IMG/VR virus record: IMGVR_UViG_3300024503_000015
Coordinates: 206,182-270,181 of that record
Direction: 5' to 3' (one strand)
DNA length: 64,000 bases
Shown in pieces: positions 37,512 through 53,042 of the stretch. Under the pieces are notes generated by a model. The model ran no database searches and had not been told where the DNA came from. It worked only from the letters and a program-made list of their open reading frames with translations. How positions within the stretch are numbered: position 1 is the stretch's first letter; each line of letters opens with the position of its first letter. The position numbers were made by a program, and so were the translations under genes.

Positions 37512-38391
37512 TGCTAACGCTGAGATTATACGTTAGCCAATAGTGCCTCTAGCATTATAGTCAGCCTTGCGAGCCAACCTTCTCTAGACATCCACATAAG
37601 CCATTACTGTACCTATGTCCACTATCAGCATCGCCGTTTTTAAAGACAGGCAGTAGTCTTGTCGCCATATGCTATTCTACGCTATCTACTCCGTTGACCT
37701 TGCGAGCCATTCAGCGGCGCTAACCACTTACGAAACTTCCAGCATAAACAGATTTCACCTTGCGAGCTACGTCTGACTCGATTACCTTGCGGCTCGAGTA
37801 TTAGATGCTTTTCACATATGACCGAGGCAGTCTTTGCATTTTATAATCGATAGTTGGGATCGAACCAACAGTCCATTGCTTAAGAGGCAATTGCGTTACC
37901 ATTACGCTATATCAAACCTACCGCGATGAGCTGCCTCTGTTGCTCAATAACCTTTTGGATTACTGAATACAACTCACCACATACCTTTTGTCTCGCGGAC
38001 TACTCAGTGATATTTCACGATCAATGTCCTGCATCAAAACAGTCCACTAACCATTAATATTGCATACAAGCCCTTAGGAGCGACCCCTTGGACAAATACA
38101 CTACCCTTTCTCATACCAATTCGCAAGTTGGTTTTGTTAGGAAGTCAGCACCACCCGTTACTTTTCATGCACCCTGGTTCCCTTGCGGGCCAGTCGATAC
38201 ACATTCTTTCCCTAACACTTGCTTCATTGTTACATCCACCGGTCTTCTCAGTGAACGCTACCTCGCGGTAGTGAGCAGGCTTGTTTACATGAACCATTAC
38301 TGGCGGAGTTGCGTAGGCTTACCTCCTTTGGGTTGATCACTCAACTTATTCTTCGTCAACGGCGAACCGCCAACAGGATAATAAACTACCC
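37512..38391 (-). ncRNA. GOLLD-like giant ncRNA (~880 nt)
   Basis: No credible ORF; five CGCAAG tetraloop hairpins; lies in a tRNA cluster; nested tRNA; 3' hairpin GCTAACG-TATAATCTCAG-CGTTAGC. Confidence 0.7.
37845..37916 (-). tRNA. tRNA-Lys(CTT) nested in the GOLLD-like RNA, no CCA
   Basis: ATTGC-CT CTT AA-GCAAT; intact D and T arms. Confidence 0.75.
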
Positions 38392-40942: not shown

Positions 40943-41032
40943 TGGTCCCCCGTTGAGGAATCGAACCTCATCCTGGACCTTATCTAGATTAATCGGTTAT
41001 AAGCCGACCTGCTCTCCATGAGCTAACGGGGG
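40943..41032 (-). tRNA. tRNA-Ile(TAT) with long variable region
   Basis: GTCGG-CT TAT AA-CCGAT; about 20-nt extra arm. Confidence 0.8.
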
Positions 41033-41040
41033 ATATAACC

Positions 41041-41118
41041 TGGAGCAACGGGTCAGATTTGAACTGACGGTTTTACGGATTTGCAATCCGTTGCATTGGG
41101 CCTCTCTGCCACCGTTGC
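41041..41118 (-). tRNA. tRNA-Cys(GCA)
   Basis: U73; anticodon GCA. Confidence 0.9.
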
Positions 41119-41123
41119 ATTAT

Positions 41124-41198
41124 TGGCGTACCCCCAGGGACTCGAACCCCGACTAGCAGTTTTGGAGACTGTCGTGCTGCCATTAACACTAGGGATAC
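41124..41198 (-). tRNA. tRNA-Trp(CCA)
   Basis: CAGT-CT CCA AA-ACTG. Confidence 0.9.
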
Positions 41199-41218
41199 AT
41201 AACACTCTCTTTCGAAAG

Positions 41219-41286
41219 TGTGTATTAAAGCATACTACTCATCGGCTACTGCCATTTGATTGTTCGGCAGTATGCTTTAATACGCT
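41219..41286 (-). ncRNA. Stem-enclosed small RNA
   Basis: GCGTATTAAAGCATACT/AGTATGCTTTAATACAC. Confidence 0.5.
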
Positions 41287-41398
41287 ACCTTTTTACACAT
41301 TCTAGTTATCGCCTAGAACTTACCATCCGGTAGGCCGCCCACATTAAGCCCATGTTTTACGTGCAGGCAGGGTCGCGTTCCCTATAACACGTTTGAGA

Positions 41399-41569
41399 TT
41401 AGTCTTGCTCTACGAGCTCAACTTCTCTCTTGTAAAGTGCTGTGTGATAAGCACGAGCACGATTAAACTTTTCTTCGATGAGTTTTTCAAAAGCATCGTC
41501 GTCCAGTTCATGCTCACTTAGCACTTTGGCACTTTTCTGTTTTCTAAAATCTTCAAAATTCATTTTCAT
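41399..41569 (-). CDS. Small hypothetical protein (56 aa, not in ORF track)
   Basis: MKMNFEDFRKQK...LVEQD; first ORF after the attenuator. Confidence 0.5.
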   Translation of the reverse strand: MKMNFEDFRKQKSAKVLSEHELDDDAFEKLIEEKFNRARAYHTALYKREVELVEQD

Positions 41570-41580
41570 TTCCAAATCTT

Positions 41581-41616
41581 ACAAAACAAAAAACCCTGGG
41601 TTTTTAGTCCAGGGTT
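41581..41616 (-). terminator. Attenuator terminator at the head of the tRNA array
   Basis: AACCCTGG-ACTAAAAAC-CCAGGGTT-TTTTGTTTTGT. Confidence 0.85.
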
Positions 41617-41642
41617 CTTAAAAGTTATTGTGTATGTTACTG

Positions 41643-41804
41643 TTAACTTACACGATCCTCCAAGAACCCTACGATAATCTCAGGTGTACGATCATTACCT
41701 AGACCTAGCCCGACATTACTAAACTGTGACCAATAGGCGGACATACATGCCGGCGCTTTGGCTTGTTTAGATATCGTTTGTCTATGTAAACTAATCGTTT
41801 GCAT
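41643..41804 (-). CDS. Attenuator leader peptide (53 aa, all 20 amino acids)
   Basis: MQTISLHRQTISKQAKAPACMSAYWSQFSNVGLGLGNDRTPEIIVGFLEDRVS; contains AGGGTTCTT, complementary to the terminator 5' arm. Confidence 0.7.
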   Translation of the reverse strand: MQTISLHRQTISKQAKAPACMSAYWSQFSNVGLGLGNDRTPEIIVGFLEDRVS

Positions 41805-41862
41805 TTTGTTTCTCTTTTTCTTACCTTCTTAAAAGTTGTAGCGGAATTGCTACTGTCTTTGT

Positions 41863-41984
41863 ATTGTAATGCCTTTCAACATCTTTGTCAACATCTTTTT
41901 GTCTTTTTTGGACAACCTAATGTTTTGTGGAAAGTGATTGCTTTACAATATTTGTATTATATGAGTATTTATAAAACTTGTCAA
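41863..41984 (-). promoter_or_regulatory. Tandem sigma70 promoters (plus late motif) of the tRNA operon
   Basis: TTGACA-N17-TACAAT (41863-41891); TTGACA-N17-TATAAT (41956-41984) with TATAAATA in its spacer. Confidence 0.8.
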
Positions 41985-42041
41985 TACCTATGTTGAAATG
42001 TGGCGATTTTGCAACATTTTGAAAACCGCCACACTTTTGTA

Positions 42042-42560
42042 TTAACCGTTTAGTACTTTTGCTAGACTATTGATCACTGCGGCAATACGTCCGATGTCAC
42101 GAAGTTGTTCTACGGTGTAGCCTTCCTTCTTCAATGTTTCGTAGTGCGCCTTAACACAGAAATGACACTTGCCAACAATACTTGCGGCAAGACTGTATGC
42201 TTCAAAGCGAGCCTTGGTAGTTCCGCCATGGCTTGCGATAGCGTTCATGCGTAACTGTGCTGGCAAGCCCTTTAGTTGCTCATCGTCTGCCATCTCAACA
42301 TATGGATACCAAACGTTGTTCTGTGCCATAATTGAACCAGCGGTCATCGCGGCATCACGTTCTTTTTCGTCTGTGATGTTGCTCATGATGAAACTAATCA
42401 ATTTTCCATTGCCGGTGCTCATAGCCGCGGCCAATGCACAACCTTCTGCTTCTACAACATCTGATAGTGTACTACGCTTGATTACTGCATCCAGATTTAG
42501 TTTTGTGTCCTTGGCGTATTCTGGTAAACCTTCTTTTAATTGATCAACCCATTGTGTCAT
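42042..42560 (-). CDS. ahpD: Alkylhydroperoxidase AhpD
   Basis: LPEYAKDTKLNL, MAQNNVWY, KCHFCVKAH. Confidence 0.92.
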   Translation of the reverse strand: MTQWVDQLKEGLPEYAKDTKLNLDAVIKRSTLSDVVEAEGCALAAAMSTGNGKLISFIMSNITDEKERDAAMTAGSIMAQNNVWYPYVEMADDEQLKGLPAQLRMNAIASHGGTTKARFEAYSLAASIVGKCHFCVKAHYETLKKEGYTVEQLRDIGRIAAVINSLAKVLNG

Positions 42561-42979
42561 AGTGTGTCTCCTTTAGTTGCTTTGGCTATGCTTTTATAGC
42601 CTTTGTAAGTTGGGTGTACGTGATCCGGGCTAGTTTCGTGCTTTCTAGCATCTATTACAAAGTCCTTGTATTTTTCTGCTACTGCAAGAACTGCCCGTCT
42701 CTTATCGTCCTTGATATTAGGTACAATCCAATAAACACGAGTGGCGTCTACTAGTTGTCTTAGACTGTCTAGTTCCTCCACTGTGTTTATTTTTGCTGTA
42801 TCGTTTGACCCTAGACTAATGATTACATTTTTTGCCTGTGTAGTGCCCTGAGTGTGTAACACATGACGATTAACATAGTCATAACTGTTAATGCCACTCT
42901 TAGCACGAGTAACACATTCTGTACGAACTTGTCCTACTCCTACTGCTAGGCTATCGCCTAGGATTAAACAATCAAGCAT
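42557..42979 (-). CDS. SGNH/GDSL hydrolase-like protein
   Basis: GDSL, SLGSND, DHVHP. Confidence 0.8.
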   Translation of the reverse strand: MLDCLILGDSLAVGVGQVRTECVTRAKSGINSYDYVNRHVLHTQGTTQAKNVIISLGSNDTAKINTVEELDSLRQLVDATRVYWIVPNIKDDKRRAVLAVAEKYKDFVIDARKHETSPDHVHPTYKGYKSIAKATKGDTL

Positions 42980-42990
42980 AATTGATCCTA

Positions 42991-43530
42991 TCAAAGAGTT
43001 TCGCCGCCTACTGTACGGTTACAAGCGCACAACTCACCAGTTTGTAGCGCATCAAGAATACGTAAAGTTTCTTCTGGGCTACGACCAACGTTCAAGTTGT
43101 TGACAGTAACGTGCTGGATAACGTTCTCTGGGTCAACAATAAATGTAGCACGTAGAGCCGCACCTGCTGGAGCATAAAATACACCCAACTGCTCAATCAA
43201 TGACAACTCGCCACGCTGTGTGTCTGCAAATTGTGTATGTGTAATTTTCTGTAAGTCTGGGTGTGCTTTTTGCCATGCGATTTTACAAAACTCGTTATCT
43301 GTGCTACCTGTTAGCAATACTGCGTCACGGTCAGCAAAGTCACCTGCTAGTTTATCGTAGGCTACAATCTCTGTAGGGCAAACGAATGTGAAGTCCTTTG
43401 GGTAGTAAACGATTACTTTCCACTTGCCAGCAAAACTTTCATCTGTAATGTCAAAGAAAGCATCTTCTGGTTGTCCTGGCTTAACACCAGTAATTGCGAA
43501 TTTTTCTAATTTATGTCCAACTGTTTTCAT
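42991..43530 (-). CDS. ahpC: Peroxiredoxin AhpC
   Basis: YPKDFTFVCPTE...GELCAC. Confidence 0.95.
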   Translation of the reverse strand: MKTVGHKLEKFAITGVKPGQPEDAFFDITDESFAGKWKVIVYYPKDFTFVCPTEIVAYDKLAGDFADRDAVLLTGSTDNEFCKIAWQKAHPDLQKITHTQFADTQRGELSLIEQLGVFYAPAGAALRATFIVDPENVIQHVTVNNLNVGRSPEETLRILDALQTGELCACNRTVGGETL

Positions 43531-46321: not shown

Positions 46322-46395
46322 TGGTGCGCTAGACAGGAATCGAACCTGCTATCGGGAGTTTAGAAGTCCCTGCCTATCCATTGAGCTTCAAGCGC
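46322..46395 (-). tRNA. Atypical tRNA: amber (CTA) or Arg(TCT) with expanded loop
   Basis: GGGA-C TT CTA AA C-TCCC; Arg-type D loop GGATA; CCA. Confidence 0.7.
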
Positions 46396-52027: not shown

Positions 52028-52130
52028 GTGATCTTTCTATGAAATAAAACTGCGATACTGTGTATTATAGGCTCGGACAGGGCATCTGTCAATGTGTTTG
52101 GTAAAATAAAAAAGGGCCCGAAGGCCCTTT

Positions 52131-52460
52131 GGTTGTTTGGGTTACAAGGTAAGTCCTACCCCGGAGTTGCAGTTTCTTAGGCTGCTACTAGACCATTGTC
52201 GGCTGTGAAGCCTTCAACAGTGAAGTACTCAAATGTAGATGCGTTTGCATTTACTAGTTTTGCTTGATTTACGGTCATCGCCTACCGTGTTGCCGTCTCT
52301 ACTATCTACCCCTGTCGAAACCATGGCAGGCCCATCATAAAAACACAATACCAAAGTAAATTTACAATGAATACCAAAGTAAATTTATGTCCTTATGGTG
52401 GACCTGGCGGGAGTCGAACCCGCGTCCAGAAGTCCTTCGCTTTGAAGGGATTACAACAAT
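52131..52460 (-). ncRNA. ssrA: Two-piece (circularly permuted) tmRNA
   Basis: Acceptor piece ...GGGTTCGACTCCCGCCAGGTCCACCA (ends 52396) precedes coding piece GGGCCTG...TTCGAC (starts 52333). Tag ANASTFEYFTVEGFTADNGLVAA* at 52177-52248. Terminator follows. Confidence 0.9.
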
Positions 52461-52463
52461 TCT

Positions 52464-53042
52464 TTAAACGCCTGCCTTTGCTAATGTGCCAAATATCCAA
52501 GGTTTTGGATCTAAGTCAATTGTCCAAGATGTCGGTTCATTTCTCATATCTTTTTTGTACACAATATTTATTTGGTCGTGTGTTAGTTTGACTAAGAAGC
52601 CGTCTGTTAATTGTTTTAGATTAGCCTTAACTGTTGCGTAATCTACAAAGGCAACAGCGAATGTTCCTTTAATTTGGACTATCATTAAATGATTAAAAAC
52701 TTTGTCTAGTGTAGTTCTTTGATTCTTACTTTCGTAAACATTTTTTAATTTAAGACTGATTGTCTTTTTAGGAGTTCCTGACTTTGCGTAGAACAAAGGT
52801 TCGTTGCCAGTTTTAACTTCTACGTCGCCATTGGTCCAATCGGTAAATTTTATATCGTAATCGCGAACGTCAGTCCACTCGATGTTCTTTTTATGATTAG
52901 ATAATTGCATTGCCGCAATAATGAATTTTTCTTTCATCATTCGATTTGTGGATTCATTTAATACTGTCTGATGACAGATGTTATTACAAGCATCTGAAAA
53001 CTTGTCAATATCTACCCAATCTAAAAATTCATTGTACTGCAT
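52464..53042 (-). CDS. Possible PD-(D/E)XK nuclease-like protein
   Basis: YD...DVEVKT; AT-rich. Confidence 0.5.
   Translation of the reverse strand: MQYNEFLDWVDIDKFSDACNNICHQTVLNESTNRMMKEKFIIAAMQLSNHKKNIEWTDVRDYDIKFTDWTNGDVEVKTGNEPLFYAKSGTPKKTISLKLKNVYESKNQRTTLDKVFNHLMIVQIKGTFAVAFVDYATVKANLKQLTDGFLVKLTHDQINIVYKKDMRNEPTSWTIDLDPKPWIFGTLAKAGV

What the first reader, a model, noticed from the sequence alone, without database searches (positions are those of the whole stretch)
41581..41984. Candidate 'pan-codon' attenuator: a leader peptide with all 20 amino acids gating the phage tRNA array
Seen in sequence: two sigma70 promoters, then an unannotated 53-codon ORF (41804-41643), then an intrinsic terminator, then the tRNA array. 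The leader uses all 20 amino acids within its first 42 codons and 36 distinct codons overall, including ATA, AGA, CTA, TTA and GGG. Codons 45-48 contain AGGGTTCTTG (41670-41661), which pairs with TAAGAACCCT (41620-41611), the terminator's 5' arm. A nested GTGTA..TACAC hairpin covers the stop codon. The downstream tRNAs also cover all 20 amino acids. Established: this is the layout of trp/his-type ribosome-mediated attenuators, but those sense one or a few amino acids through codon runs. Inference: fast translation masks the antiterminator and transcription stops. Stalling at almost any codon, from starvation or host anticodon-nuclease defence, frees it and induces the phage tRNAs. That would be a general translation-stress sensor; I know of no described example.
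Basis: partly seen in the sequence, partly recalled or inferred. Interest (0 to 1): 0.93.

Follow-up and report, generated by a model that had tools for sequence, protein, structure and literature searches.

The report
All-amino-acid leader gating phage tRNAs
A family of freshwater giant phages places, ahead of their tRNA gene arrays, a short translated leader that is kept by selection to contain every one of the 20 amino acids and that ends in a conserved terminator/antiterminator switch, which looks like a built-in sensor of general translation trouble that turns the phage's own tRNA genes on.

Summary
Two peripheral claims are wrong. The record has no tRNA-Ala. A 56-aa gene and a ~190-nt structured RNA lie between the terminator and the first tRNA.

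Comparative data strengthen the idea. The leader is a family of at least 161 distinct peptides of 42-58 aa. 142 contain all 20 amino acids, 19 contain 19, and none has fewer. Chance gives about 2%.

Rare residues move rather than disappear. Cys occupies 21 alignment columns beside its main one, yet 106 of 123 peptides have exactly one. His is never lost.

Triplet-only indels and third-position variation show the ORF is translated. AlphaFold finds no fold.

Across 64 distinct attenuators the 5' arm, the shared arm and the terminator 3' arm covary three ways (G-C-G 26, A-U-A 25). The antiterminator (-22 to -33 kcal/mol) always beats the terminator (-15 to -18).

Every locus with about 900 nt or more of downstream sequence carries tRNAs.

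Best reading: a ribosome-mediated attenuator with a "pangram" leader. Ribosome delay at any amino acid gives read-through into the tRNA operon.

Regulation itself is untested, and I found no published description. This is a new variant of a known mechanism and is of high interest.

The parts
41956..41984 (-). Promoter P1, TTGACA-17-TATAAT (12/12)
   Evidence: Conserved in relatives. In RNA run X17, coverage begins downstream of it and is zero upstream.
41863..41891 (-). Promoter P2, TTGACA-17-TACAAT (11/12)
   Evidence: Invariant TTGACA and TACAAT in 23 aligned leaders.
41838..41853 (-). 5' stem-loop of the transcript (GTAGC / GCTAC around AATTCC)
   Evidence: The closing pair changes on both sides in 4 sequences. 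Distant clades have a different stem-loop at the same place.
41643..41804 (-). Leader ORF, 53 codons plus stop; contains all 20 amino acids
   Evidence: The coding signature is triplet-only indels and third-position variation. AlphaFold gives pLDDT 55.6 and pTM 0.14.
41729..41762 (-). Mid-ORF hairpin P1 (codons 15-26). Its closing stem GCCAA / TTGGT includes the invariant Trp codon. Candidate RNA polymerase pause hairpin.
   Evidence: It forms in all 40 distinct variants at -9.5 to -16.5 kcal/mol, with different inner stems. The only variable sites in the core clade are unpaired.
41676..41705 (-). Hairpin P2 (GGTCTAGG / CCTGAGAT) spanning the NDRTPE codons
   Evidence: Only one-sided G-U/A-U changes were seen, so support is weak.
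41657..41672 (-). Antiterminator 5' arm (codons 45-50)
   Evidence: The T/C change that swaps Phe and Ser is always matched by A/G in the partner.
41630..41653 (-). Apical hairpin of the antiterminator, with the stop codon (41645-41643) in it
   Evidence: GTGT/ACAC is replaced by TGGG/CCCA or GTTAC/GTAAC in other variants.
41609..41624 (-). Shared arm: 3' strand of the antiterminator and 5' strand of the terminator
   Evidence: three-way covariation.
41583..41616 (-). Intrinsic terminator: 8-bp stem, 9-nt A-rich loop, T6-G-T4
   Evidence: Compensatory changes in L007, L145 and L160. The T-run lies 47-57 nt after the stop codon in all variants.
41399..41569 (-). Small conserved gene (56 aa, predicted helical, no family match) between the terminator and the tRNAs
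   Evidence: It is present in every relative and evolves faster than the leader (dS 0.65 against 0.28).
41205..41398 (-). Conserved structured RNA of unknown kind. It is probably part of the same transcript.
   Evidence: z = -5.0; 12 of 22 pairs change on both sides. No Rfam match.
40943..41198 (-). First tRNAs of the array (Trp, Cys, Ile-TAT). No other sigma-70-like promoter lies between P2 and these genes.

Best explanation
This is a ribosome-mediated transcription attenuator at the head of a phage tRNA operon. Its leader peptide is a "pangram", kept by selection to contain every amino acid, mostly the rare ones exactly once.

Shown:
- Two consensus promoters drive a short transcript that carries a translated 42-58-codon ORF.
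- The last codons of the ORF form the 5' strand of a long hairpin. The 3' strand of that hairpin is also the 5' strand of an intrinsic terminator, so the two structures exclude each other.
- Both structures are maintained by compensatory change.
- The long hairpin is about 10 kcal/mol more stable than the terminator.

Inferred:
- If a ribosome follows the polymerase closely, it occupies the 5' arm while the shared arm and the terminator are being made. The terminator then forms and transcription stops.
- If the ribosome is delayed at any codon of the first ~40, because any charged tRNA is scarce, the 5' arm is free and pairs first. The polymerase then reads through into the small gene, the structured RNA and the tRNA genes.
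- This gives a negative feedback loop between translation speed and phage tRNA supply.
- The conserved mid-ORF hairpin probably pauses the polymerase so that the two machines start in step.
- The near-invariant NDRTPE codons sit at the last position from which a ribosome still leaves the arm free.
For: - Anatomy at the stated coordinates.
- Translated ORF: all indels inside it are multiples of 3, while non-coding indels are not. Variable sites in the invariant core are all third-position and synonymous.
- Not a folded protein: pLDDT 55.6, pTM 0.14. No Pfam, PHROG or atlas relative.
- Pangram property: 111 of 123, then 142 of 161 distinct peptides hold all 20 amino acids, and none has fewer than 19. 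Expectations are about 2% from the phage proteome and 4.2% with the family's own composition. A column shuffle gives 50 of 123, with a maximum of 65 in 2000 shuffles.
- The part upstream of the arm (mean 39 aa) is complete in 91 of 117 peptides, against 0.3% expected.
- Compensation: peptides lacking Cys at the main column have one elsewhere in 92 of 99 cases, spread over 21 columns. Only 6 of 62 peptides that keep it have a second. For His the figures are 29 of 29 against 9 of 132.
- On a tree built without these residues, the Cys pattern changes at least 31-44 times with only 6 changes between presence and absence. The His pattern changes at least 14-27 times with no loss.
- Codon level: both Ser boxes 68/68, both Arg boxes 61/68, both Leu boxes 57/68, ATA together with ATT or ATC 62/68.
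- Switch: the core helix is 96.5% paired with two double-sided pairs, and 0 of 500 shuffles reach it. The antiterminator is -22 to -33 kcal/mol and the terminator -15 to -18 in all 61 variants folded. Three-way covariation: G-C-G 26, A-U-A 25, wobble-compatible 8, mismatched 5.
- Synteny: every locus with about 900 nt or more of downstream DNA has tRNAs. The upstream genes differ.
- No other sigma-70-like promoter lies before the first tRNAs.
- The leader is present in metatranscriptomes. In one run coverage starts at the promoters.
Against: - There is no experimental evidence of translation, termination or regulation.
- The RNA contigs end at assembly-graph branch points, not at RNA 3' ends. 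In two runs the depth beyond the terminator is similar to the depth before it, and DNA carry-over cannot be excluded.
- The ribosome-binding site is weak (GAGAA with an A-rich spacer).
- No anti-antiterminator exists, so an untranslated leader would read through, unlike trp.
- The NDRTPE motif and other residues are conserved in position, which a pure composition sensor does not require.
- Part of the sequence and codon conservation is explained by RNA hairpins.
- This genome has no tRNA-Ala although the leader has four Ala codons.
- Internal promoters mean that only part of the array is necessarily gated.
- The Fisher tests are not corrected for phylogeny, and the tree of 50-residue peptides is poorly resolved.
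Confidence: 0.7

Rival explanations
1. The switch is real, but the sensor is a regulatory nascent peptide. The near-invariant NDRTPE (with YWS) arrests or slows the ribosome in response to one specific signal such as a small molecule or a factor. The all-20 content would be secondary.
For: NDRTPE is conserved as amino acids while its codons vary (CGT/CGC; CCT, CCA and CCC). It lies just upstream of the 5' arm, where a stalled ribosome would decide the outcome. Known arrest peptides are conserved in sequence (own knowledge).
Against: It does not explain why Cys, His, Tyr, Phe and Lys are relocated rather than lost. It does not explain why both codon boxes of Ser, Arg and Leu are kept. YWS and AK are explained by the closing stem of hairpin P1. 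No match to any known arrest motif was found.
Confidence: 0.12
2. The alternative helices are real but are set by something other than the ribosome. Candidates are a phage or host protein (for example the product of the small gene just downstream, acting as an autoregulator), an RNA, or RNase III cleaving the long hairpin to separate the leader from the tRNA precursor.
For: The long irregular hairpin of about 25 pairs resembles phage RNase III sites (own knowledge). A conserved small gene always follows. The antiterminator is the default fold.
Against: This gives no reason for a translated ORF that ends in the hairpin's apical loop in every variant. It also gives no reason for the pangram composition. 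The overlap with a canonical terminator is maintained by three-way covariation, which processing alone does not need.
Confidence: 0.1
3. The ORF encodes an ordinary small phage protein that is highly expressed from two strong promoters. The terminator simply ends its mRNA and the hairpin stabilises it. Under this reading the all-20 content is chance.
For: The family is conserved, with an invariant core. All 20 amino acids in one 53-aa peptide has a chance of 2-5%.
Against: 142 of 161 members are complete, with rare residues moving between columns. Phe and Ser swap freely where the RNA pairs. No fold is predicted. Synonymous sites are twice as constrained as in the neighbouring gene. The more stable helix destroys the terminator.
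Confidence: 0.04

Closest known systems
Leader-peptide transcription attenuators of amino-acid operons (trp, his, leu, thr, ilv, phe of enterobacteria)
   Same: A promoter-proximal translated leader. An intrinsic terminator and a mutually exclusive antiterminator that share one arm. The position of the ribosome decides which helix forms. A hairpin lies inside the leader that could pause the polymerase.
   Different: There is no run of one amino acid's codons; instead every amino acid is present, the rare ones once. No anti-antiterminator was seen, so lack of translation should give read-through. The leader is long (42-58 codons). The regulated genes are tRNAs, not biosynthetic enzymes. The element is encoded by a phage.
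toiL uORF of the E. coli topAI-yjhQ transcript (PMC12121999)
   Same: A uORF that reports general translation stress. Stalling at several different positions relieves premature termination.
   Different: toiL acts through Rho and RNA accessibility. It was described as sensing ribosome-targeting antibiotics, controls a toxin-antitoxin pair, and is not reported to be compositionally complete.
Antibiotic-responsive ribosome-mediated attenuators (for example the vmlR leader, PMC9226507)
   Same: A short leader ORF, an intrinsic terminator and antiterminator, and induction when ribosomes stall.
   Different: These are tuned to drug-dependent stalling at particular peptide contexts and regulate resistance factors.
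T-box riboswitches
   Same: A terminator/antiterminator decision that reports tRNA charging and controls genes of the translation supply chain.
   Different: T-boxes bind one uncharged tRNA directly and need no translation. No T-box or any other Rfam family matches here.
pyrBI / pyrE attenuators
   Same: They sense how closely the ribosome follows the polymerase rather than one amino acid.
   Different: There the leader ORF runs through the terminator, so close coupling prevents termination. That is the opposite sign. The signal there is the nucleotide pool.

Membership tests
Leader-peptide (ribosome-mediated) transcription attenuator | Short translated ORF between the promoter and the regulated genes | tested here: met
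   The ORF is open in all variants. Indels occur only in multiples of 3 inside it. The conserved core varies only at third positions. Translation itself was not observed.
Leader-peptide (ribosome-mediated) transcription attenuator | Intrinsic terminator after the leader and before the regulated genes | tested here: met
   A G+C stem plus a T-run lies 47-57 nt after the stop codon in all variants, with compensatory changes. Its activity was not measured.
Leader-peptide (ribosome-mediated) transcription attenuator | Antiterminator helix that shares an arm with the terminator | tested here: met
   The core helix is 96.5% paired with two double-sided covarying pairs. Three-way covariation is seen over 64 attenuators. 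The antiterminator is more stable than the terminator in every variant.
Leader-peptide (ribosome-mediated) transcription attenuator | The antiterminator arm lies where a translating ribosome covers it | tested here: met
   The 5' arm is codons 45-50 of 53, and the stop codon sits in the apical loop. Coverage by the ribosome is inferred from footprint size.
Leader-peptide (ribosome-mediated) transcription attenuator | Run or cluster of codons for the sensed amino acid | tested here: not met
   There is no codon run. All 20 amino acids are present instead, and Cys, His and Trp usually occur once.
Leader-peptide (ribosome-mediated) transcription attenuator | Pause hairpin / anti-antiterminator (the 1:2 helix of trp) | tested here: inconclusive
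   A mid-ORF hairpin is conserved in 40 of 40 variants, with different inner stems. It does not overlap the antiterminator arm, so it could pause the polymerase but cannot act as an anti-antiterminator.
Leader-peptide (ribosome-mediated) transcription attenuator | Read-through responds to the supply of charged tRNA | not testable with these tools
   The metatranscriptome contigs could not resolve 3' ends.
T-box riboswitch | Stem I with specifier loop, and the T-box sequence in the antiterminator bulge | tested here: not met
   No Rfam family scores at E <= 5 on the minus strand of 41150-42050 beyond chance snoRNA/miRNA hits. A UGG in the arm is not conserved across clades.
Functional small phage protein | A predicted fold or a family match, with conservation explained by the peptide | tested here: not met
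   pLDDT 55.6 and pTM 0.14. No Pfam, PHROG or atlas relative. Conserved residues coincide with RNA stems.

The most novel reading that the evidence does not exclude
Phages have evolved a pan-amino-acid (and partly pan-isoacceptor) "pangram" leader peptide. It works as a universal probe of charged-tRNA supply. Any shortage, from starvation, host shut-off or tRNA-cleaving defence systems, delays the ribosome and switches on the phage's own tRNA operon. This would be a homeostat for the translation apparatus that needs no protein regulator.
Probability: 0.55. Interest if true: 0.95.

Novelty: new variant of a known kind. Interest (0 to 1): 0.9.

Why it matters
How phage tRNA arrays are regulated is essentially unknown. 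Why phages carry near-complete tRNA sets is still debated; the proposals include codon bias, host tRNA decay and escape from anticodon nucleases.

A leader that samples all 20 amino acids and gates the array would give those genes a demand-driven control. It would also be the first attenuator built to sense translation in general rather than one amino acid.

It offers a clean, testable rule. Deleting one amino-acid type from the leader should blind the switch to that amino acid only. That also makes it a compact natural part for reporting the charging of any tRNA.

The selection signature itself is unusual and could be searched for elsewhere: residues conserved in presence but not in position.

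Tried and rejected
- GenBank phage collection: the region matched only through tRNA-Trp, so it gave no relatives.
- Neighbours of the upstream AhpD-like gene: 80 loci were examined, and most have no tRNA array after it. That gene is not part of the module.
- Databases: Pfam and PHROGs gave nothing for the leader or the small downstream gene. Rfam gave nothing at the site. The ESM atlas score was at noise level.
- AlphaFold: no confident fold.
- RNAalifold on the full leader chose the terminator and missed the antiterminator, because the apical parts do not align. The helix was therefore tested explicitly and per sequence.
- Metatranscriptome contigs: the apparent 3' end at 41586 in three runs looked like termination. 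It is explained by a 36-nt unitig (41580-41615) shared among co-occurring strains, plus the overlap between adjoining assembly contigs. I rejected it as evidence.
- Retention of all 20 amino acids inside the close clade of 27 variants is not independent evidence, because 19 of the 20 are supplied by its invariant core. The decisive evidence came only from distant relatives.
- Hits of the profile to two large Ig-like repeat proteins (LGNDATPEITV) were judged to be chance.
- A profile of all clades was too diverse for the locus finder. A one-clade alignment worked.
- T-box-like direct tRNA sensing was considered and rejected.

Full report
**Context.** The window is the last 64 kb of a 270-kb IMG/VR virus record estimated to be 71% complete. 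It is a giant phage from river and freshwater metagenomes. All features discussed lie on the minus strand. ARAGORN finds 31 tRNA genes between 33542 and 41198, one CTA-anticodon tRNA at 46322, and a tmRNA.

**Observation.** Reading 41300-42200 and the pattern scan confirm two near-consensus sigma-70 promoters, at 41984-41956 (12/12) and 41891-41863 (11/12).
- The ORF at 41804-41643 encodes 53 residues.
- It reaches all 20 amino acids at codon 42 and uses 36 distinct codons.
- The ten bases at 41670-41661 pair with those at 41620-41611. GTGTA/TACAC brackets the stop codon.
- The terminator is an 8-bp stem with a 9-nt loop and a T6-G-T4 tail at 41616-41583.
- Folding the leader alone gives -78.3 kcal/mol (z = -4.7). 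The minimum-energy structure uses the long-range helix, not the terminator.

Two side statements fail.
- No tRNA-Ala exists anywhere in the record.
- A small gene (41569-41399) and about 190 nt of structured RNA separate the terminator from tRNA-Trp.

**Is all 20 unusual in this one sequence?** Only moderately.
- In this phage's own long ORFs, 0.55% of 42-aa windows and 2.3% of 53-aa windows hold all 20 amino acids. So do 11 of 216 N-terminal 53-mers.
- 36 distinct codons is in the top 1.3% of windows. Codon adaptation is in the lowest 1.4%, owing to rare G+C-rich codons.
- Taken alone, this would be a post-hoc curiosity.

**Close relatives.** Protein and DNA searches found 27 distinct variants of the locus in viral and metagenome contigs.
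- In all of them the tandem promoters, a 5' stem-loop, the ORF, the helix, the terminator, the small downstream gene and a tRNA array recur.
- The upstream gene differs, and so does the order of the tRNAs. The module therefore travels with the array.
- Inside the ORF every indel is a multiple of three. Outside it they are not.
- Within the invariant core the only variable sites are synonymous third positions. The ORF is therefore under selection as a translated sequence.
- Its synonymous divergence is less than half that of the adjacent gene (dS 0.28 against 0.65). In the leader, 15 of 21 invariant residues keep an invariant codon, against 1 of 7 in the adjacent gene. This points to an added RNA-level constraint.
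- All 27 variants hold all 20 amino acids. However, 19 of the 20 are supplied by the invariant core, so this clade alone adds little.

**Distant relatives decide the matter.** A profile search of 1.84 billion representative proteins found 14 further small proteins below 50% identity. Twelve hold all 20 amino acids and two lack only Val.
- A second profile search gave 302 hits, of which the best 120 were returned. With the proteins fetched earlier these made 123 distinct peptides of 46-58 residues. Of these, 111 are complete and 12 have 19.
- Adding 40 peptides from 53 viral loci gives 161 distinct peptides of 42-58 residues. 142 are complete, 19 have 19, and none has fewer.
- Random peptides with the family's own composition are complete 4.2% of the time. 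Shuffling residues within alignment columns gives 50 ± 4.7 complete peptides of 123, with a maximum of 65 in 2000 trials.
- The segment upstream of the helix (mean 39 residues) is already complete in 91 of 117, against 0.3% expected.
- Counts are under-dispersed. Cys occurs exactly once in 106 of 123 peptides and His exactly once in 114 of 123.
- Rare residues are conserved in presence, not in position. In the 123-peptide alignment Cys occurs in 20 columns and His in 11.
- Peptides without Cys at the main column have one elsewhere in 92 of 99 cases. Only 6 of 62 that keep it have a second (p = 2e-28).
- The corresponding figures are: His 29/29 against 9/132; Tyr 23/23 against 45/138; Phe 76/76 against 54/85.
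- These tests ignore phylogeny. On a tree built with Cys and His masked, the Cys pattern changes at least 31 times (by number of states) to 44 times (on the tree), with only 6 changes between presence and absence. The His pattern changes 14-27 times with no loss.
- At the codon level, 68 distinct leaders use 33-42 different codons. They carry both codon boxes of Ser in 68/68, of Arg in 61/68 and of Leu in 57/68. ATA occurs together with ATT or ATC in 62/68.
- AlphaFold gives no fold (pLDDT 55.6, pTM 0.14). No family library knows the peptide.

**The RNA switch.**
- On 23 aligned leaders the ten-pair core of the antiterminator is 96.5% paired. Two pairs change on both sides (C-G 16 / U-A 7, and U-A 17 / C-G 4). 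None of 500 shuffles reaches the score, and slid registers collapse.
- One of these changes swaps Phe and Ser in the peptide. Here the RNA, not the peptide, is constrained.
- The apical stem changes sequence but persists, and it always holds the stop codon.
- In all 61 variants folded, the antiterminator (-22 to -33 kcal/mol) is more stable than the terminator (-15 to -18).
- Over 64 distinct attenuators, the base of the 5' arm, its partner in the shared arm, and that partner's partner in the terminator 3' arm covary as G-C-G (26) or A-U-A (25). Eight are wobble-compatible combinations and five have a mismatch in the antiterminator only.
- This is the classical signature of two alternative, functional helices.
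- A hairpin in the middle of the ORF forms in all 40 distinct variants with different inner stems. Its closing stem pairs the Ala-Lys codons with the Tyr-Trp-Ser codons. It explains part of the sequence conservation and is a candidate pause site.

**Mechanism.**
- Shown: the anatomy, the coding signature, the selection for a complete amino-acid set, the two alternative helices, and the linkage to tRNA arrays.
- Inferred from ribosome footprint size and from established attenuator logic: a ribosome keeping pace with the polymerase covers the 5' arm (codons 45-50) while the shared arm and the terminator emerge, so transcription stops. A ribosome delayed anywhere in the first ~41 codons leaves the arm free, the stronger helix forms first, and the polymerase reads on.
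- Because there is no anti-antiterminator, an untranslated leader should also read through.
- No other sigma-70-like promoter lies between P2 and the first tRNAs, but several lie deeper in the array.

**RNA evidence.**
- Six river metatranscriptomes hold the region, and four were examined.
- In one run the coverage begins just downstream of P1 and is zero upstream, which is consistent with promoter activity.
- Contig ends at 41586, 41609 and 41615 are assembly branch points caused by co-occurring strains.
- Depth beyond the terminator relative to before it is 1.0, 0.6, about 0 and 1.0 in the four runs. A gap common to all four runs and possible DNA carry-over forbid any conclusion about termination.

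**Comparison with known systems.** The element works like the trp/his class of leader-peptide attenuators and meets its structural criteria. It lacks the defining codon run and the anti-antiterminator, and it regulates tRNA genes.
- The nearest functional analogues are uORFs that sense general translation stress, such as toiL (PMC12121999), and antibiotic-responsive attenuators (PMC9226507). These differ in terminator type, signal and target.
- T-box riboswitches share the purpose but not the mechanism, and nothing in Rfam matches.
- Four full-text searches found no description of a compositionally complete leader or of attenuation of phage tRNA arrays. The library does not cover most subscription journals.

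**Verdict.** I rate this a new variant of a known mechanism and of high interest.

Noticed in passing
window 41205-41398 (-): A conserved, strongly structured RNA fills the gap between the small gene and the first tRNA (z = -5.0). 12 of 22 consensus pairs change on both sides among relatives, and it has no Rfam match. A 144-nt metatranscriptome contig (41330-41473) that overlaps it has about 3 times the depth of the leader. It may be a new RNA class tied to phage tRNA arrays.
   Followed up: partly
window 37517-37980 (-): A GOLLD RNA (RF02032, 207 bits) lies inside the tRNA array, with tRNA-Lys(CTT) at 37844-37917 embedded in it.
   Followed up: no
window 52107-52549 (-): A phage-encoded two-piece (permuted) tmRNA of betaproteobacterial type, which hints at the host group. 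A phage ribosome-rescue RNA next to a stall-sensing leader may be functionally connected.
   Followed up: no
window 46322-46395 (-): A tRNA with a CTA anticodon (amber suppressor; ARAGORN labels it Pyl), apart from the main array.
   Followed up: no
window 41399-41569 (-): A small, conserved, predicted helical protein of 54-62 aa always follows the terminator and precedes the tRNAs. It has no family match and evolves faster than the leader. It may be co-regulated with the tRNAs or may itself be a regulator.
   Followed up: partly
window 42042-43530 (-): The phage carries AhpC-type peroxiredoxin, GDSL-like hydrolase and AhpD/CMD-like genes just upstream. The AhpD-like gene has more than 590 relatives in viral contigs.
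   Followed up: no
L184:2001-2160: A natural variant in which the 5' arm is fused directly to the terminator 3' arm. The shared arm and the apical hairpin are deleted, so the leader ORF reads on for 52 aa. It may be a constitutive mutant of the switch.
   Followed up: no
whole record G000 (270 kb): There is no tRNA-Ala gene although tRNAs for the other 19 amino acids are present. Related arrays (L107, L116, L125, L132) do carry Ala. The record is only 71% complete.
   Followed up: partly
P0027, P0039 (not in window): Large Ig-like repeat proteins carry LGNDATPEITV repeats that hit the NDRTPEI part of the leader profile. This is probably chance resemblance.
   Followed up: no
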